From Chlorokybus atmophyticus (lineage: Eukaryota > Plantae > Mesostigma and Chlorokybus algae): 64,000 nucleotides of DNA. Made by a program: the position numbers and the translations under genes. Where the stretch lies: positions 1,162,705-1,226,704 of the forward strand of contig RHPI01000797.1 of NCBI GenBank assembly GCA_009103225.1, given 5' to 3'. This document shows, piece after piece, positions 38,687-46,800 of this stretch (the first letter of the stretch is position 1; every line of letters begins with the position of its first letter). The notes beneath the pieces are model-generated. The model was given only the letters and a program-made list of their open reading frames with translations, was not told where the DNA came from and did no database searches.

Positions 38687-40043
38687 ATGGGAGCGATGAC
38701 GCAAGCCAGGAGGAGAGCGTGGGCCAGGCCGATGGGCATGGATCGCACCAACGCGGACTTCCCGGTAAAGCACTTTGGTCTCTTTGTAGCGAGTCATGTG
38801 TGCTGCCATAAAGAAGTTGGTACAGAGCTAGTTAACAAACGTTCTTTGATGAATGCAGGTGCTGAACCGCTTAACCGAGTTCAAGCGGTTAGAGCTCGTA
38901 CGGGTATGCAGTGAATGTTATCATATTTTCTTGTGACAACAATGCTGTGCAAGTTAAGAGAGCGCACATATTCCCAGACCTTGACCTTACCGTTGTGATG
39001 CATACTCAGCATGCGCACGAGACATTGGTGATGAGGGCCCGCAAGGCGGGGACATCCCCGCCCTCGCGTCCGCCTCACCCGGCCCTGGACCTCACAGCTC
39101 CCGTTCGTTCCGCCCCCGCCCACTCCGCCCGGCCCCGCCACCTGATAAAAGGTGCGTGCCTGTACGTGCGTGGGTGAGATTGTGTGTTTGTGCATGTGCA
39201 TCGTTGTATGTCAATGTTGATACAACGGTGACGCCAATCACAAACAACTGCAGAGAGGTGTGCTGCAATTGATCGCGAGAATGCCATGCTGTTGACCAAG
39301 CTGGAGGAGATCGCCGTGCGCGCATCTACAGGTCGTAGTACCATGCAATTCAGGTGTGATGCAGTTCCCACACAGCATACAGACACTTGCGCCGACAACA
39401 ATGACAACAACTTCTCCCGTTCGCCTTCCAGTCCCGGACTTAGGTTGGACGCGCATCAGAGGCCGGTGATCGACAACGTGGCGCCGCTGCGGGTGCACAC
39501 GGGAGCCGGCAGCAATAACGCTATCCTGAGGAGAGAGGAGCTGGAGCGCATCAACTGCGAGAACGTTACGTTGCTCAGACGCATCAAGCACGCGCACAAC
39601 CACGACGCTATACCCACCGCGGCCGACACCATCCAACAGGTGCAGTGGTAGAGGTTGTAGAGGTACCAGATATATTTCCCATCCTTGAGTGGCATTGAGA
39701 TACAGCAGTCAAATGTAACGAAGCCCGTGCATCTGCACAGGAGGCTTATCTAGCGAACATCTCACGCAACAACCGGTTGCTGCACGCCCTGAAGTTCGGA
39801 GCGGGCACTGCCAGGCAAGCCGATGCTGTGCATCCCAGCGTGTTGTCTCTTGAACATTTCAAGCAAGGCATCAATGGGTTTTTCTTGCATTCATTTTCTA
39901 TTTGGCTTTCCAGTGCACCAGGCACGCCACGGCGGTCTCTGTCGGTAGAGGGCGGGGGAGGGAGTCCGCGGGTCATGCTGCACACGTCGAGGGCAAGGCT
40001 GCAGTCCTCCCCACGCGCGCAGACGGTCAGCGCCACAACATAG
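38687..40043 (+). CDS. CFAP97/KIAA1430 (hemingway)-like cilia-associated protein; first and last exons uncertain
   Basis: Spliced reading HAHETLVMRARK...PALDLTAP...HLIK|ERCAAIDRENAMLLTKLEEIA, then NAILRREELERINCENVTLLRRIKHA and |EAYLANISRN. Confidence 0.65.
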
Positions 40044-40683
40044 GCTTCTTGTCCTTGCACTCTGTGCCTGTTATTGCGCCATACTGCGTTGCTGCTCATA
40101 TCAAGCTGCGTCTCTGTCATACTTACACACGAGGTGTATCGTGTGCTGACAGGAGTCACCAAGGTTGGAAGCCAGGAAGCCTGGCAGGGAACCCAGTCCC
40201 GAAGGGGCGCTGCCTGCCATTACCTGAGGCTGTGTTGGGGCTGAAAGCGAGTAATGGAAATCCTTCCTTGCAAGCATGTGCTTGTGTAGTTATAGGCGAG
40301 CTTGTTGTACAAAATGTGCCGCAGCAACAGGCACAGTACGCACTCCACCGGACGCTCCAGGGTGTCAATTGTACCAGCTTGGTGTCACTTCCGGCAGAGC
40401 ACTGTGTTGCGATAGTTAACACAGGCCTACTATACAGCTATACCCGTGTTCAAGTACGCAATAGAACCTGCTGTAGTTCCACTCACCTCTTAAGGGCATT
40501 CGTAACCATCAGTTGCTGGTTACGACTACTACTTCATGCACCTGTTGCAGCCCTACAGACTGTGTGGCACATCACAAATGCTTATGAAGCACTGAGTAAA
40601 GGTCAACCCAATCTCCAACTGTGCAACATGGCGGTGCGCATCAAAGGCAACTAGTTCCACACGCATTTTAAAAACACAAAGCA

Positions 40684-41850
40684 CTAGTAATTGAACTGCA
40701 GTTTTTGCCAAGTTTTCTCCAGATAAGATGGGAGTGGAGCAACAACTGTCAACAGCTTGCCTCGTCTGCTGGGTATTGGCAGTGCCAACTCTGCCACTAG
40801 CTGCGGTGCCAGTGTCACAGATCTGCAGTGCAAATGCAGCTGCTGCGCCGTGACACGCGGAGCACCCCCAGTTGCTTCGTACCCATACTTGAAGTCGCCA
40901 ACAATGGGAGATGACAAGGCAGCTGCACAGTGCAACCGCAGCTGGTGCTTGCGGCCGGTGATTGGTGCCAGTTCCAGCCAGGTCAGGCCATTGGCAGCTG
41001 TACCCATGACTCGGTACTCCGTAATGGCTGACAGCGCATCAGGATGGCCCACTTCGCAGAGCGTCATTCTCTCGAAGTTGCCTCGCGTGCGAGCTGGACG
41101 CACCAGATTCACAATCCTCCCTGCAGACCGAGGCGGCAGCTGTGTGGTCAATGCCCAATACCGTTTGGTGATGTTGGCAAAGTTTTGGCTGTCCTTCAGT
41201 GCCGACGATACGACCTTGGCAGCTTGCTTTGTTCTTGCTAGAAGTAAACAACCCGTCACTTCGCGATCGAGCCGATGCACAAGTCTGGGCGGTTCGTCAC
41301 TGTCGAAGCAGAGCGCTGGATTCATCAGCCGATCCAACGACTGCTGCACGCCTGTTCCCCCTTGCACGGCAAGTCCAGCAGGCTTGTTGATGACAAGGAG
41401 ATCCTCAGACTTGAACAGCACCAACTCTTGCAACCATGTTGCTGGAGGCAGTGTCTGCGACGCTTCGCTTTTGCGCACCTGTTGTTGCTGCACCAGTTCC
41501 AGCGTGGCTCTTGGAATGCATAGACAGGTGTTGGCAGACAGAACTTCGTCTGCAGACACGCGCCTTGTGGTGGTTCCATCGAGCACACTCACTTGGCGGC
41601 GTCTGAACAGCCTTTGCAAAGTGCCAAAAGACAACAATGGACAAGCTGACTTCAACAACCGGAACGCGGTCTGGTCTGCCTGCACATGCTCATGCTCGCC
41701 TTCTACACGAAGAGGTACATACCACGAAGTCAGAGCTTCTGACTCAGTTCCTAACAACGTTGATGCTTGAGAGCCAAAGCATGCAGCCAAGGTGTTGACT
41801 CTGCTCGAGCACGCCACTTGACGAACAGCTTGCAAGGCTGCACGCCTCAT
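40684..41850 (-). CDS. RluA-family RNA pseudouridine synthase, intronless, with an organellar-targeting-like N-terminus
   Basis: Motifs LLVINKPAGLAVQGG, LVHRLDREVTGCLL (catalytic HRLD), ITKRYWAL, PITGRKHQLRLH, PIVGDFKYG, LHLHC. First ATG at 41850 (MRRAALQAVRQVACSSR). Confidence 0.95.
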   Translation of the reverse strand: MRRAALQAVRQVACSSRVNTLAACFGSQASTLLGTESEALTSWYVPLRVEGEHEHVQADQTAFRLLKSACPLLSFGTLQRLFRRRQVSVLDGTTTRRVSADEVLSANTCLCIPRATLELVQQQQVRKSEASQTLPPATWLQELVLFKSEDLLVINKPAGLAVQGGTGVQQSLDRLMNPALCFDSDEPPRLVHRLDREVTGCLLLARTKQAAKVVSSALKDSQNFANITKRYWALTTQLPPRSAGRIVNLVRPARTRGNFERMTLCEVGHPDALSAITEYRVMGTAANGLTWLELAPITGRKHQLRLHCAAALSSPIVGDFKYGYEATGGAPRVTAQQLHLHCRSVTLAPQLVAELALPIPSRRGKLLTVVAPLPSYLEKTWQKLQFNY

Positions 41851-41858
41851 GACTGTGG

Positions 41859-42876
41859 TCACAACTTCTTGGCCACGACCACATTCAGGGCGAGGTCGTC
41901 ACCAAAGCCTGGCACGGTGAAGGGTATTGGGTAACTGCCTGTCTTTGCTATCGGCTCTGATATGTTGAGCAGCCGTGCATCCAACTTAACAAGTAGTTGT
42001 TGTTGAACCTGCACAGGCAGCAAACACCTCTTGTTCTTGCATACTGCGACAATGCTGCAATGCAGATGTTCTCATACACTGCACGATGACATACCGCTGT
42101 GACAATGTCGTCAGCACTGATAGGCTTGCGCAACTCCAAACTTCCTTCCTCAGCTGCTTTTGAGCAGAACCGCCTCAGTTTCTGCAAAGGATGCACAAAC
42201 TCAGCTGCTTCTCATGAGGCAAGTGTACAAGTACTCGGATCATCTGAGAGCAGGCTATACCACGCTGCCAGTCGTCAAACGCAAAACAACTGCAGCAAGC
42301 TCGCGCTTTGCTTTCTGTTGCGCCTCATGTGCAAGCTGTGCTACTGTCTTCGCTACAGGCTGAGAAGTCTGCAGCCACAACCAGCGAAACGTTAATTGAC
42401 TGCCTTAGCTAGCAAGCGTGTTCATAAGATATTGCCACAGCGCCGAACCTTCAAGGCTGCTGCAGCTTGAAGGTTCTTCTCGGTACCCAAATTGACCACC
42501 CTACGTGGATACAAAAAGTTGCGTGCAAATCCAGGCGCGACCTTCACCACCTCACCCTTCTCACCCAGCTTCTTGAAGTCCTGCAATGAGCCAAGGTACT
42601 GCAGGTTAGCAGGCCGCACCAGGACAACTTCAATACGAGCTAGTCGTATACCTGCGTCAGTACGACCTTCAGCTGGGGATTTTCTCCAAAGCAGCGCACG
42701 TTGACTGCTGCTATACCTGGTATGAAGGTCGTAACGCCCTGCTCAACAACAACGTGGGCGTCAGTAAGTGCTGTGACACAATGCGCATGTATGTGCTTGA
42801 GCGCCTGCGTGGACGCGCTTACAATCACATCGTCTACATAATCAGTCTCCGCATCAACCAGAACGCAGCTTGGCAT
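41859..42876 (-). CDS. MRPL9: Ribosomal protein L9 (bL9, probably mitochondrial), multi-exon; true start uncertain and possibly further upstream
   Basis: LKVVLTQ|DFKKLGEKGEVVKVAPGFARNFLYP (L9 N-domain); GSLELRKPISADDIVTA|VQQQLLVKLDARLLNISEPIAKTGSYPIPF...NVVVAKKL* (C-domain, last exon 42008-41859). Confidence 0.85.
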
Positions 42877-43857
42877 GGCTGAGAAGTAGTGTGTACAAGC
42901 CAGAGCTACAGCCAGAACTACAATGCTTCAGTAAATCACAGCCAGGTTGTTAGGCGCCTGGCTGTCAGTTAGCAGTCACCACCATACCGTCTCGTATGGT
43001 CAGTCCTTTGCACGCTGTGTGACCTGCACCGAACATCATGTGCGCACGGGCTACCTTAATACTGCTGCAAGTACGTTGCATGGTGCTCAATATCAGGATG
43101 CGAGCGGGTAAACTGACCACATGCAACGGGCTTACAGCCGCTGGCAGTTACCATGCATCGCTACATATACACGCACGAAAGCACACATAACGCAACTACA
43201 TTGAATCTCAACGTTGGTGAAGCTGTTCAGCATGCTCTTCAGCAGTTTACCGAACAAAATACACTCCAAGCAGGCGCCGGCAGCAGTACCTGACGTCCCT
43301 TCCCGCCGAAGCCTTGCGCGACCTGCCGCCACATGTAGAGAGCTGCGTCTGTACAGGGTAAAGCACCTGTTGCGTTGTGCCTGCAGCGAGCCCCACAACG
43401 ATGCCACCGCCAACGACACCGCCAGCACCGTCTCCGCCGCCACCAGCGGTTCAACGCAATTGTCAGGCAGCGCCATCATAGACTAGCTGGCGTCGCGCAG
43501 TGCGGTGTCCTAGCAGAACTGCACTGGCGGGCATCGCACTGCGTCCATATTGCTGCTTCCCACCCAGCTGCTAAGTTTCAGCCAGCCTGACGCTTAGGCC
43601 AGGCCAGGCAGGCGGCGGCGTGAGCGGCTGCGGCAGGGCCGAGAGGCTGCCTGCGCTGAGGCATTGATCCACGTAGGAGTCTGTTCGGAAGCTTGCTGAA
43701 AACAGCGCGAAGGAGCTAGAACAGGAGGGCGTGATGATGTTGCTGCCTGCTTGAGAGGGCTGCAGTGCGTTGCGTCCTGCGTGAATGTCGTCCGTCTTGG
43801 GTGAGCTGCGAGGTTGCACAAGACGTGTGTCTCTGAGAAGCACTGCTTTGGGCGACA

Positions 43858-46800
43858 ATGGGTCAAAACGAAGCATCCGGCGCAGCTGCTTTCACCCCTA
43901 ACGACATTGGTCCCATCTTCAATCTGCTGCAGCAAGCGCTCAACCAGGATCAGCGAGTGCGCCAGCCTGCTTCAGAAGCCCTTGCATCATGCGAGGATCG
44001 TGCCGGCTTCTGCTCCTGCTTGCTGGTAGGTCGCAGTCTCGTTGATTCGCCTTTGTTTCACTGACATGCGCTATCTGGACGCATCCATAACAGCTGCGTT
44101 CCGGCATTAGTTGCGTTCGTGCCTCATGCATCCAAAAAGGGTTGGAATCGGTCTGTCACACCTCACATTGTGATCTGTTGACATGCATGTTGTCTGTGCT
44201 ACCTGGCTGAAGCTTGAGAATGATATAGAGTGACCTTACGTGCTGCGTCCCAGGAAATTGTGAGCCATGCGTCCACATCAAGCGACGAAAGCGCAAGGTG
44301 GCTGGCAGCCGTGCACTTGAAGAACTGCGTGATACGGCATTGGCGAATGCGCAGGGATGGCAGGTGTGTACAACTCAGCAGCTGGTTTGCGTGTAGGCAA
44401 GTGAGGCTGACTGCTTGTGTGTCGTCTTTCGATTCCTTTGCCTGCCCGTGTCAGTGGAATTGGCGAAGGTGAGAAAGCTCATCTTCGTTCCAAGTTGCTT
44501 GATGTGTTGGGAGATCGCAACAGCCAGGTAGTAAACATAATGCTTACCATTGTCTAGTCATGTAGTCGTATGCATTGTTGTGCTTTGGTCACGCAATTGT
44601 TGTCGATCCATGCGCTATAACGCGACTCGCCTTGCAGATTGCAGTGCAACTAGCAATAGTGGCCGCAAAGATTGCTCGATTTGACTTCCCACGTGATTGG
44701 TATGTAGCTCTACTCTGTTTTTCTATTGGTAGCCCCTGGCGTGACGTTGCAGGTTGTGCATCTTGCAAGAGGCCATGTGTGGTTGGTGGTTGAGTGCAAC
44801 ATTATGACACATGCGGACATATCATTTTGCTGTGCGTATATGCCAGGCCACAGCTGTTTCCAACACTCCTCAGCAAGCTGCAATCACCAGATGTGTTGCT
44901 CACAACTCGCATATACCTGGCACTGCACCATATCCTCAAGGAGCTGGCGTCAAAGAGATTGATGGCTGATCAACGACACTTTGCCCAGGTGAGGTTCCAC
45001 AAACTGCTGGCTTTGGTGTGAATATGCTGTAGTCGCAGGTAACTCACACAGGAAGTTGCAGATTGCTTTACAGCTTTTTGACTTGGTTTGGTCACACTGG
45101 TGTGCGGATACACAACGAGTTGTATCTGCACTGCCGGCCATATCACAAGCCTCCATGGAAAGCATTCCAAACGATGAGGCAGCTGCACTGTTGTTGGCAT
45201 GTGAGCGATGGTTGCTGGCGCTAAAAGCTCTGCGGCGACTGTTGCTTTTTGGATATGGTCAAGCGGATGGGCAAGCAGTGCAGGTACGTGCATGCCGCTA
45301 GGCTTGCACTAACATGTGCGTGCAACGCCCAGCATTGTTGACTTGATTCTGTCACAGTTGATGGGGCGTTTGTCAGCAATGGCAGCAGCATCCATCCCAC
45401 AGGATGTACCACAAGTGGCAGTCACCGTTCCGGTCTTGCTGCAAGCACTACAGTCTCTGCTGCCATATTGTGAGTTAAGACTGCTGCTTGAAGAAGATAT
45501 GACATTGTCTGTTGACCACGTGACCTACATGGACAGTCTGGCACGCACTTCAAAAACATGAGCATATGTGAGACAGCCTGCACTGGGCAGCCACTGACTT
45601 GCAATGCTTGACAGGGCGTTCCATGCAGCAGAGCCAGCATGCTCTGCGATGGGTTACAGAGCGTGGCAGCTTGAAGGTTATGAAGACTATGATTGACATA
45701 CAGTTAACCCATCCCAGCTCATTTCGACATCAAGCCGTGATGCTGCCCGTGCTGGACTTCTGCTACAATCAGATGTGCAGTGCTGAAGACATTGGTGGAC
45801 CTGCCGTATTTGAACGACTCCTGATACAGTGCATGGTGTTTATCCAAAACGTTGTAAAGTGCCCAATTTATCGGCCAGGCACAGAAGGTCCTGGTTTGTA
45901 TGGAGATGTTGGGCCAGCAGGGCGAACCCCTGAGATGGAACAGCAGAAGCGACTGATTGCATCTGACGGGAAGTCAACCGTGGACGCCTTTCTCAACCAG
46001 GACCGCCTCATATCGCTATGCATCATCCTGGTAGAAAGGTGCGAAGCGTGTTGCACATGCATTCGTACTGGTGATTCGTCGGTGTTTCATCTAGCAATCA
46101 ATGCGGTGATTGCGGTTTGTGAAATGTGAAAACAACTTAGGTACTTTACGCTCTCTGTTGCTGATCTAGAAGAGTGGGCTCAGCACCCAGAAGGGTTTCA
46201 CCAAGAGCAAGACATCACGCACTGGAAGGACAGGCTTCGGCCATGTGCTGAAGCTTGTTTCTTGGTGTTGATGGAGAAGCACCGCGAGGTAATTGCCTGC
46301 ATCTGCGTTCGTGTGTCCCTGTTCCTGTCCATGTAACCCATGGGTATGCTGCGCAGGTTCTTGCTCCCGTCACCACCTCGCACTTGCAGCAAGCTGTTGC
46401 AGCCTGCCCACCCTCTCAAAGTGATGATGCACACACATCTGGCCACATCTCTGCCGAGATGTTGCGGAAGGAAGCTTGGTACAATGCAGCGGGGATTGCC
46501 TCATCTGATCTCGCTGATGTCATTGACTTTGAAGCCTGGTACAAGAGTAGCCTTGCACTCGAGCTAGCCAACAGGCAACCCAACGGAAGGATATTGAGGA
46601 GGCGGGTAGCTTGGCTCCTGGGTTGCTGGGTCAGCAAGATCACGGAAAGTATACGGCAGTCGGTGTACGCGTCCCTGGTTAACCTCATTGCAGAAGATGA
46701 TGCCGTCGTGCAGCTCGCAGCCGTCGCGTCATTGCGTGCTGTAATAGACGATTGGCACTTTTACGAGCAGTCGTTTTTACCATATGTTGAAACCTGCCTC

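What the first reader, a model, noticed from the sequence alone, without database searches (positions are those of the whole stretch)
40684..42876. Candidate eukaryotic bicistronic locus: ribosomal L9 stop codon is 8 nt from the ATG of an intronless pseudouridine synthase
Seen: the last L9 exon (42008-41859, VQQQLL...NVVVAKKL*) ends in TGA at 41861-41859, followed by CCACAGTC and then ATG at 41850-41848, which opens the complete RluA-family ORF. There is no room for a 3' UTR, poly(A) signal and promoter. The downstream ORF has no introns, unlike nearly every other host gene here. Known: polycistronic mRNAs have been reported in chlorophyte algae, and L9 and RluA-type synthases both act on the organellar large ribosomal subunit or its rRNA. 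Inference: one mRNA co-expresses two functionally linked organellar-translation proteins, by leaky scanning or re-initiation, possibly in a streptophyte lineage.
Basis: partly seen in the sequence, partly recalled or inferred. Interest (0 to 1): 0.82.

Follow-up and report, generated by a model that had tools for sequence, protein, structure and literature searches.

The report
Two-gene mitoribosome mRNA in Chlorokybus
In the early-branching streptophyte alga Chlorokybus, a spliced gene for mitochondrial ribosomal protein L9 and an intronless gene for a mitochondrial rRNA pseudouridine synthase lie 8 bases apart and assemble as one RNA in three data sets; this is a new example of the two-proteins-from-one-mRNA layout known from green algae, and the published gene model wrongly fuses the two.

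Summary
On the minus strand, the L9 stop (TGA 41861-41859) is followed by CCACAGTC and then by the ATG (41850-41848) of an intact, intronless 388-codon RluA-family ORF. The real first exon is at about 43414-43290, with its ATG at 43334.

Spliced contigs, which must therefore come from RNA, carry all six L9 exons and run without a break into the synthase ORF. They come from three runs in two studies, and one run is from a lineage about 93% identical. No internal splice, loose end or poly(A)-like tail is seen at the junction.

L9 is the mitochondrial type (bL9m). ORF2 is the vertically inherited orthologue of land-plant mitochondrial PUS4, with human RPUSD4 and trypanosomatid mt-LAF3 among its nearest solved relatives. 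Both proteins therefore act on the mitochondrial large ribosomal subunit.

The sequence fits leaky scanning. The ORF1 AUG has U at -3 and +4. Only three AUGs follow, all out of frame and in weak context. The ORF2 AUG has G at -3.

The published model Chrsp33S05103 is an artefactual fusion. Single-molecule and translation proof are missing. This scan has already followed up similar loci elsewhere in this genome. Verdict: a new member of a known kind.

The parts
43290..43414 (-). Exon 1 of the transcription unit. It holds at least 80 nt of AUG-free 5' leader and the first 15 codons of bL9m (ATG 43334-43332, context cucuacAUGu).
   Evidence: The joint 43290/42738 is seen in X1, X2 and X3. The contigs reach 43367 (X1) and 43414 (X3).
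42739..43289 (-). Intron 1 (551 nt, GT..AG).
   Evidence: It is skipped in contigs of X1, X2 and X3 (table 5). It has no Rfam match.
42652..42738 (-). Exon 2 of bL9m: the end of the presequence and the start of the L9 N-domain.
42449..42580 (-). Exon 3 of bL9m, the L9 N-terminal domain.
   Evidence: PF01281 at E 1.3e-13.
42261..42368 (-). Exon 4 of bL9m, the linker helix.
42095..42181 (-). Exon 5 of bL9m.
40567..42008 (-). Terminal exon. It carries the last 49 codons of bL9m, the 8-nt spacer, the whole of ORF2 and at least 117 nt of 3' UTR.
   Evidence: Contigs are colinear with the genome over 42006-40681 (X1), 42006-40567 (X3) and 42006-41575 (X2). No joint or loose end lies inside.
41859..41861 (-). 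bL9m stop codon, TGA.
41851..41858 (-). Inter-ORF spacer CCACAGTC (8 nt).
40684..41850 (-). ORF2: an intronless 388-codon RluA-family pseudouridine synthase, the orthologue of land-plant mitochondrial PUS4. Its AUG context is acaGucAUGa. It has an Arg-rich N-terminus free of acidic residues, and the HRLD catalytic motif.
41680..41882 (-). The 203-nt GT..AG 'intron' used by the published fusion model Chrsp33S05103. It is not spliced in any RNA contig seen.
   Evidence: The P0001 sequence compared. No such joint appears, table 5.

Best explanation
This is a nuclear bicistronic gene of Chlorokybus. One promoter, upstream of about 43414, drives one pre-mRNA. Its five introns all lie in the upstream cistron and are removed. 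The mature mRNA carries ORF1 (mitochondrial ribosomal protein bL9m, 202 aa), an 8-nt spacer and ORF2 (a 388-codon mitochondrial RluA-family rRNA pseudouridine synthase, PUS4/RPUSD4-like), then a 3' UTR. Each product has its own N-terminal presequence-like segment, so each must be started at its own AUG. The most likely route to ORF2 is leaky scanning. 40S subunits often pass the very weak ORF1 AUG (U at -3, U at +4) and the three weak, out-of-frame AUGs that follow, and they start at the better-placed ORF2 AUG (G at -3). The layout couples the supply of a large-subunit protein to that of an enzyme that modifies, or helps assemble, the same subunit's rRNA. Because ORF2 has no introns, no exon junction lies downstream of the ORF1 stop, which should spare the mRNA from junction-dependent nonsense-mediated decay. 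Shown: the sequence layout, the splicing, both ORFs on the same assembled RNA in three runs and two lineages, and the identity of the two proteins. Inferred: a single molecule, translation of ORF2 from it, leaky scanning, the NMD argument and mitochondrial import.
For: RNA layout. X1 record 3 (1821 nt) and X3 record 10 (1976 nt) each hold all L9 exon joints and run unbroken through the spacer and ORF2. X2 record 8 joins the L9 exons to the first 275 nt of ORF2. No joint, loose end or tail lies between 42006 and 40681. X5 (DNA) keeps the introns. In X2, three separate contigs over the L9 end, the middle of ORF2 and the 3' part of ORF2 have near-equal depth (11.9, 10.2, 12.8). That is what one transcript would give (with the tool's caveat on depth).

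Protein identity. L9 reaches the TIGR00158 cut-off (65.1 against 58.6). Its best solved relatives are plant mitoribosome bL9m chains 9evs, 9gyt and 6xyw, at E 4e-17 to 6e-15. ORF2 hits PF00849 at 1e-27. Its closest named relatives are land-plant mitochondrial PUS4. In the tree it is sister to the land-plant clade and is separated from bacteria with 100/100 support. Its nearest solved chains are mt-LAF3 (6yxx, 7aoi) and RPUSD4 (5uba), and the HRLD motif aligns.

ORF2 is kept as a coding sequence. Of 28 differences from the diverged lineage in its last 443 nt, 14 fall at third codon positions and 13 are synonymous. The 3' UTR differs about twice as often.

Leaky-scanning signature. The known 5' leader has no AUG. 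The ORF1 context is cucuacAUGu. The three intervening AUGs all have a pyrimidine at -3 and no G at +4. ORF2 has G at -3. AUG observed/expected is 0.31 in ORF1 and 0.78 in ORF2. L9 has no internal Met. Experimentally validated chlorophyte bicistrons show the same pattern (PMC11892635; PMC7896298).

Both N-termini are Arg/Lys-rich, with the first acidic residue at position 34 (L9) and 36 (ORF2).
Against: All RNA evidence is short-read contigs, and an assembler would merge two overlapping transcripts; the tool says so itself. There is no TSS, poly(A), long-read, ribosome-profiling or peptide evidence.

AUG depletion is weak statistically. It gives P = 0.11 against dinucleotide shuffles. Against permuted ORF1 codons there is no depletion at all (P = 0.64), so it is largely explained by the amino-acid and codon make-up.

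The AUG at 41884 opens a 46-codon ORF that overlaps the ORF2 start.

The pair is not linked in Selaginella. Land-plant PUS4 transcripts look monocistronic. Conservation is therefore shown only within Chlorokybus.

The spacer in the diverged lineage could not be read, because the difference tables were truncated.
Confidence: 0.7

Rival explanations
1. There are two overlapping monocistronic transcripts. The L9 mRNA would end at a poly(A) site inside ORF2, and an ORF2 mRNA would start from a promoter inside the L9 gene. The assemblers would then have merged them into one contig.
For: Contigs cannot show starts, ends or single molecules. An 8-nt gap forces any separate transcripts to overlap, so they would be merged. 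Gallaher et al. also report loci that are expressed both ways.
Against: No loose end, tail or branch appears between 42006 and 40681 in any of three RNA runs. Depth is near-equal over separate X2 contigs that cover the L9 end and the ORF2 body. The ORF1 AUG is weak and later AUGs are scarce, which separate transcripts would not need. The same unbroken contig is seen in a lineage about 93% identical.
Confidence: 0.15
2. The mRNA is bicistronic, but ORF2 is reached by termination-reinitiation. Ribosomes that finish L9 would stay on the mRNA and restart 8 nt downstream, instead of 40S subunits scanning past ORF1.
For: The stop and the start lie only 8 nt apart, within the short range over which post-termination ribosomes can move (reviewed in PMC11892635). 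The two routes do not exclude each other.
Against: ORF1 has 202 codons, and re-initiation efficiency falls steeply with upstream ORF length (PMC11892635). No UGGGA (TURBS-like) motif lies in the last 120 nt of ORF1. A weak ORF1 context would lower ORF2 output under this model, whereas it favours it under leaky scanning. In chlorophytes, in vivo tests favoured leaky scanning.
Confidence: 0.2
3. The locus encodes a single L9-pseudouridine synthase fusion protein, as in the published model Chrsp33S05103. It would be made by splicing out 41882-41680, which removes the L9 stop and the first 57 codons of ORF2.
For: A 570-aa fusion model exists in the public annotation (P0001). The 203-nt segment has GT..AG ends and keeps the frame.
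Against: No contig in X1, X2 or X3 shows this joint, while all five real introns are removed in the same contigs. The model's 5' end (start at 43476) is not covered by the RNA contigs either. No other protein of 313-997 aa with an L9-like region was found (low sensitivity). The skipped part encodes a presequence-like N-terminus.
Confidence: 0.03
4. ORF2 is a passenger. It would be a retrocopy sitting in the L9 3' UTR that is transcribed but not translated, or no longer needed.
For: ORF2 is intronless, while the Selaginella orthologue has introns (a 1979-nt gene for 474 aa). It sits exactly where a 3' UTR would be.
Against: The 388-codon frame is intact and the catalytic HRLD motif is present. 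Differences from the diverged lineage are biased to third positions, with an excess of synonymous changes relative to the share of synonymous sites. The fusion model of this locus was the only Chlorokybus entry among the 120 hits listed. The AUG context is good.
Confidence: 0.05

Closest known systems
Exclusively polycistronic nuclear mRNAs of chlorophyte algae (Gallaher et al. 2021, PMC7896298; leaky-scanning study 2025, PMC11892635), e.g. the TOM22-like/SDHAF3-like mitochondrial bicistron
   Same: Two conserved, separately framed ORFs sit on one spliced mRNA. ORF1 is about 600 nt, which is the Chlamydomonas median. The ORF1 Kozak context is weak, few AUGs precede ORF2 and the leader is short. 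As in the TOM22/SDHAF3 pair, both products are mitochondrial.
   Different: The lineage differs: Streptophyta, class Chlorokybophyceae, not Chlorophyta. This gene pair is not mentioned in the main text of either paper. The spacer is 8 nt against medians of 212-260 nt. The evidence here is short-read contigs only, without Iso-Seq, H3K4me3, poly(A) or peptide data.
CDC26-TTM3 bicistron of land plants and green algae (as cited in PMC11892635)
   Same: It is a bicistronic nuclear mRNA in the streptophyte line, and its stability is tied to NMD and to translation of the downstream ORF.
   Different: The genes are unrelated, its ORF1 is very short and it is deeply conserved. The L9-PUS4 linkage is absent in Selaginella.
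Other candidate bicistrons of this same genome noted by this scan (TatB-NTH1 s1-194310; ABC transporter s1-177162; prefoldin-ankyrin s1-078875)
   Same: Same organism and same kind of evidence. TatB-NTH1 has the same architecture: a spliced upstream mitochondrial gene, about 10 nt, then an intronless downstream ORF.
   Different: The gene pairs differ, and those notes were not re-tested here.
Human RPUSD4 and trypanosomatid mt-LAF3 (mitochondrial large-subunit rRNA pseudouridine synthase / assembly factor); land-plant PUS4
   Same: ORF2 shares the RluA-type catalytic domain and the HRLD motif, at E 1e-25 to 2e-25. It groups with land-plant mitochondrial PUS4.
   Different: None of these is known to share an mRNA with a ribosomal protein. 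The substrate of the Chlorokybus enzyme is untested.

Membership tests
Green-algal-type bicistronic nuclear mRNA | Two non-overlapping ORFs for distinct conserved proteins lie on the same strand, are closely spaced and are not joined by read-through. | tested here: met
   bL9m and the PUS ORF are 8 nt apart, and ORF2 is in the +2 frame.
Green-algal-type bicistronic nuclear mRNA | One mature transcript molecule spans both ORFs. | tested here: inconclusive
   Spliced contigs span both ORFs in X1 and X3 and bridge the junction in X2. Contigs cannot prove single molecules, and no long reads were available.
Green-algal-type bicistronic nuclear mRNA | Transcription starts only upstream of ORF1, and the poly(A) site lies only downstream of ORF2. 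| not testable with these tools
   Only contigs were available. There are no internal loose ends or tails, which is weak support.
Green-algal-type bicistronic nuclear mRNA | Both ORFs are translated into separate polypeptides. | not testable with these tools
   The support is indirect: purifying selection on ORF2, and each ORF has its own presequence-like N-terminus.
Green-algal-type bicistronic nuclear mRNA | Weak ORF1 Kozak-like context, few and weak AUGs upstream of ORF2, and a better ORF2 context. | tested here: met
   ORF1 has U at -3 and +4. The three internal AUGs all have a pyrimidine at -3. ORF2 has G at -3. AUG observed/expected is 0.31 against 0.78. The depletion alone is not significant (P = 0.11).
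Ribosomal protein bL9, mitochondrial form (bL9m) | L9 N- and C-domains; scores as L9; closest to mitoribosomal L9 and not to plastid L9. | tested here: met
   PF01281 at 1e-16. PF03948 scores 21.6 bits, just under its 23.2 cut-off. TIGR00158 scores 65.1 against a cut-off of 58.6. The best PDB hits are plant bL9m at 4e-17 to 6e-15, against chloroplast L9 at 2e-9 or worse.
RluA-family pseudouridine synthase (PUS4 / RPUSD4-like, mitochondrial) | PseudoU_synth_2 catalytic domain with the HRLD catalytic Asp motif. | tested here: met
   PF00849 scores 97.6 bits against 26.8. HRLDREVTG aligns to HNLDRETSG of 7aoi.
RluA-family pseudouridine synthase (PUS4 / RPUSD4-like, mitochondrial) | Orthology to land-plant mitochondrial PUS4, not a bacterial transfer. 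| tested here: met
   In the tree, bacteria are separated with 100/100 support and Chlorokybus is sister to Selaginella plus the angiosperms. The long-branch caveat applies.
RluA-family pseudouridine synthase (PUS4 / RPUSD4-like, mitochondrial) | Reaches the bacterial NCBIfam subfamily or equivalog cut-offs (rluA_subfam, RluC); has an N-terminal S4 domain. | tested here: not met
   TIGR00005 scores 118.9 against 192.7, and RluC scores 68.8 against 378. There is no PF01479 hit at E up to 0.1. It is therefore a diverged eukaryotic member and not a bacterial-type RluC equivalog.
L9-pseudouridine synthase fusion protein (published model Chrsp33S05103) | A splice removes the L9 stop and joins the two frames. 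| tested here: not met
   No 41882/41680 joint is seen in X1, X2 or X3, although all five true introns are spliced in the same contigs.

The most novel reading that the evidence does not exclude
The locus would be one of a family of bicistronic nuclear genes in the earliest-diverging streptophyte lineage. They would share a rule: an intron-bearing upstream cistron, about 10 nt or less of spacer, and an intronless downstream cistron. That would mean leaky-scanning bicistrons predate the chlorophyte-streptophyte split, or arise repeatedly when retrocopies land in 3' UTRs. It would also mean intron-free downstream ORFs are selected to avoid nonsense-mediated decay. In this case the layout would fix the ratio of a mitoribosomal protein to the enzyme that modifies the same subunit's rRNA.
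Probability: 0.3. Interest if true: 0.65.

Novelty: new member of a known kind. Interest (0 to 1): 0.45.

Why it matters
Bicistronic nuclear mRNAs are well documented in chlorophytes. In the streptophyte line, which leads to land plants, I know of only isolated cases such as CDC26-TTM3. A well-supported case in Chlorokybus, alongside the other loci this scan has followed up in the same genome, suggests the mechanism is older or more widespread than the published surveys show. The pair is also unusually coherent in function: a mitochondrial large-subunit protein with a mitochondrial large-subunit rRNA pseudouridine synthase. Most algal bicistrons show no evident functional link. On the practical side, the public gene model is a chimeric 570-aa fusion. 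It would mislead orthology, domain-architecture and targeting analyses, and it should be split into two proteins of 202 and 388 aa.

Tried and rejected
- Exact-sequence look-up of ORF2 in public assemblies found no record.
- The word search with the L9 region among 313-997-aa proteins returned only the Chlorokybus fusion model. The search with L9 alone returned only six bacterial L9s. Its sensitivity for this diverged protein is too low to say anything about other algae.
- Context of ORF2 homologues. P0072 and P0045 are bacterial and sit next to an isochorismatase gene with no rplI, so this is not an inherited operon.
- L001 and L005 are monocistronic plant-type transcripts without L9.
- Selaginella PUS4 has a 194-aa gene upstream on the same strand. 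That gene is not L9 and carries PUS-like fragments.
- A bacterial (HGT) origin of the intronless ORF2 is rejected by the tree.
- The last 120 nt of ORF1 hold no TURBS-like UGGGA motif. TGTAA and AATAAA are absent from the whole mRNA model, so nothing can be said about poly(A) signals.
- Rfam finds nothing in 40400-43700, including the 551-nt intron. That intron holds only two short inverted repeats.
- The antisense 337-aa ORF (40757-41770, + strand) has no Pfam hit and is taken as a shadow ORF.
- The supplementary tables of Gallaher 2021 are not held, so their locus lists could not be checked for this pair.
- Synteny in other algae therefore remains untested.
Full report
**What is in the sequence**

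On the minus strand, the last L9 exon ends ...AAG AAG TTG TGA, with the TGA at 41861-41859. Eight bases follow (CCACAGTC, 41858-41851), then ATG at 41850-41848. That ATG opens a 388-codon ORF that ends at TAG 40686-40684. The ORF matches Pfam PseudoU_synth_2 at E 1.1e-27. The exon at 42580-42449 matches Ribosomal_L9_N at E 1.3e-13. ORF2 lies in the +2 frame relative to ORF1, so read-through of the TGA cannot join them. The core observation is therefore exact.

**RNA evidence**

One search found runs that hold this stretch, and I laid four of them on 39500-44500.

- X5 keeps the introns at low depth, so it is genomic DNA.
- X1, X2 and X3 lack the introns at exact GT..AG borders, so they come from RNA, although the tool only guesses their kind.
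- X1 record 3 (1821 nt, depth 323) runs from 43367 through five splice joints into the terminal exon. It continues colinearly from 42006 to 40681, three bases past the ORF2 stop.
- X3 record 10 (1976 nt) has the same structure from 43414 to 40567. It differs at about 7% of positions, so it is a diverged lineage filed under the same organism name and in the same study as X1.
- X2 comes from another study. Its record 8 joins the L9 exons to the first 275 nt of ORF2, and two further contigs cover the rest.
- No joint, loose end or tail lies between 42006 and 40681 in any run.
- In X2 the three contigs have similar depth: 11.9 over L9 and the start of ORF2, 10.2 over the middle of ORF2, and 12.8 over its 3' part. 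One transcript would give this. A ribosomal-protein mRNA overlapping a separate enzyme mRNA would not obviously do so. I treat this as a hint only, given the tool's warning about depth.

All three RNA runs splice 43290 to 42738 and so remove 551 nt. Exon 1 carries ATG 43334-43332, and the spliced ORF encodes a 202-aa L9. The known 5' leader is 33-80 nt (contig ends at 43367 and 43414) and holds no AUG. A divergently transcribed spliced gene begins near 43595 on the plus strand.

**Organism and existing annotation**

The best database relative of ORF2 is P0001, 'jgi/Chlat1/5085/Chrsp33S05103'. It is a 570-aa protein with both PF01281 and PF00849, so the window is Chlorokybus, a streptophyte of the class Chlorokybophyceae.

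That model is a fusion. It jumps from ...DDLALN to ADQTAF..., which treats 41882-41680 (203 nt, GT..AG) as an intron and drops the L9 stop and the first 57 codons of ORF2. Its start at 43476 and an odd frame change in exon 1 are not backed by the contigs either. None of the RNA contigs shows that joint, while they do splice all five true introns. I conclude the fusion is a gene-prediction artefact. A rare isoform cannot be excluded, because contigs drop rare variants.

**What the two proteins are**

- L9 reaches the NCBIfam L9 equivalog cut-off (65.1 against 58.6).
- Its best solved relatives are the bL9m chains of plant mitoribosomes (9evs, 9gyt, 6xyw, at E 4e-17 to 6e-15). These rank ahead of bacterial L9 and well ahead of chloroplast L9.
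- The closest named relatives of ORF2 are land-plant 'RNA pseudouridine synthase 4, mitochondrial' at 32-36% identity. Alphaproteobacterial RluC-like enzymes score about the same.
- A maximum-likelihood tree separates the bacteria with 100/100 support. It places Chlorokybus as sister to Selaginella plus the angiosperms, which is the species-tree order. ORF2 is thus the vertically inherited orthologue and not a recent bacterial transfer, with a long-branch caveat.
- Its nearest solved chains are the trypanosomatid mitoribosome assembly factor mt-LAF3 (6yxx, 7aoi) and human RPUSD4 (5uba). The catalytic HRLD motif is conserved.
- ORF2 does not reach the bacterial NCBIfam cut-offs, and no S4 domain is detected by Pfam.
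- Both N-termini are rich in Arg/Lys and free of acidic residues for 33-35 residues. That looks like a mitochondrial presequence; this reading is an inference.
- Both products thus appear to serve the mitochondrial large ribosomal subunit.

**Is ORF2 a living gene?**

The listed differences of the diverged lineage cover the last 443 nt of ORF2. Of 28 differences, 14 are at third codon positions and 13 are synonymous. The adjoining 3' UTR differs about twice as often. This is the pattern of a protein under purifying selection.

**How ORF2 is probably translated**

- The ORF1 AUG has about the worst possible context, cucuacAUGu, with U at -3 and U at +4.
- Only three AUGs lie in the 614 nt between the two start codons. 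All are out of frame, all have a pyrimidine at -3 and none has G at +4.
- The ORF2 AUG has G at -3.
- By the composition-based measure of the 2025 PNAS study, AUG observed/expected is 0.31 for ORF1 and 0.78 for ORF2. That study reports medians of 0.71 and 0 for ORF1 in its two algae, and about 1 for ORF2.
- L9 has no internal methionine.
- The depletion is not significant by itself. It gives P = 0.11 against dinucleotide shuffles, and nothing beyond composition when ORF1 codons are permuted.
- The AUG at 41884 opens a 46-codon ORF that overlaps the ORF2 start.
- Re-initiation after a 202-codon ORF is expected to be inefficient, and no TURBS-like motif is present. The 8-nt gap keeps it possible as a minor route.

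I therefore favour leaky scanning, as shown in vivo for chlorophyte bicistrons.

**Why ORF2 may be intronless (inference)**

With no intron downstream of the ORF1 stop, no exon junction complex can mark that stop as premature. The NMD link of the plant CDC26-TTM3 bicistron is discussed in PMC11892635. The Selaginella orthologue does have introns: its gene spans 1979 nt for 474 aa. The Chlorokybus state could come from retroposition into the L9 3' UTR, from intron loss, or from an ancestral condition.

**Conservation**

- The layout is shared by two Chlorokybus lineages.
- It is not shared by Selaginella. There the gene upstream of PUS4 is not L9.
- Plant-type PUS4 transcripts are monocistronic.
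- Bacterial homologues are not next to rplI.
- Other algae could not be tested.

**Relation to what is known**

Exclusively polycistronic nuclear mRNAs are established in chlorophytes (PMC7896298, PMC11892635). Neither paper's main text mentions this pair or any streptophyte alga. A full-text search listed no paper that combines Chlorokybus with poly- or bicistronic among its best hits. This scan has already followed up several similar loci in the same genome. One of them, TatB-NTH1, has the same architecture. I did not re-test those notes.

**Verdict**

This is a new member of a known kind: it extends the phenomenon to an early streptophyte, the pair is functionally coherent, and the published gene model needs correcting. 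Proof that a single molecule spans both ORFs, and that ORF2 is translated from it, is still missing.

Noticed in passing
window 41680-41882 and 43290-43479 (minus strand): The public Chlat1 gene model Chrsp33S05103 (P0001, 570 aa) fuses L9 and the pseudouridine synthase through a 203-nt GT..AG 'intron'. It also starts at an ATG (43476) beyond the ends of the RNA contigs. Neither feature is supported by the contigs.
   Followed up: yes
window 42739-43289 (minus strand): The first intron of the L9 gene is 551 nt, while the other four are 71-86 nt. It has no Rfam match and only two short inverted repeats (43064-43138, 42932-42971).
   Followed up: partly
window about 43291 (run X2): One low-depth X2 contig matches the window from 43291 upward. 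On its other side it carries 255 letters that occur nowhere in the 64-kb window. It could be exon 1 joined to something distant, or a chimeric contig.
   Followed up: partly
window 43595-44500 (+ strand): A spliced gene is transcribed divergently from the L9 gene (joints 44024/44253 and 44360/44452, seen in X1 and X3). It leaves only about 180-230 nt for a shared bidirectional promoter. Its first two exons gave no Pfam hit.
   Followed up: partly
window 39500-40400 (+ strand): Low-depth contigs with a GT..AG joint (39635/39737) suggest a weakly expressed plus-strand gene that converges on the 3' end of the bicistron.
   Followed up: no
L004 6419-7403 (Selaginella GL377635.1): The annotated 194-aa gene just upstream of Selaginella PUS4 carries fragments that resemble PUS4 itself (e.g. 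...VVNKPPGLPVQ...). This suggests a partial tandem duplicate and not an independent gene.
   Followed up: partly
window 40757-41770 (+ strand): A 337-codon ORF lies antisense to ORF2 and has no Pfam hit. It is most likely a shadow ORF of the moderately G+C-rich coding strand.
   Followed up: partly
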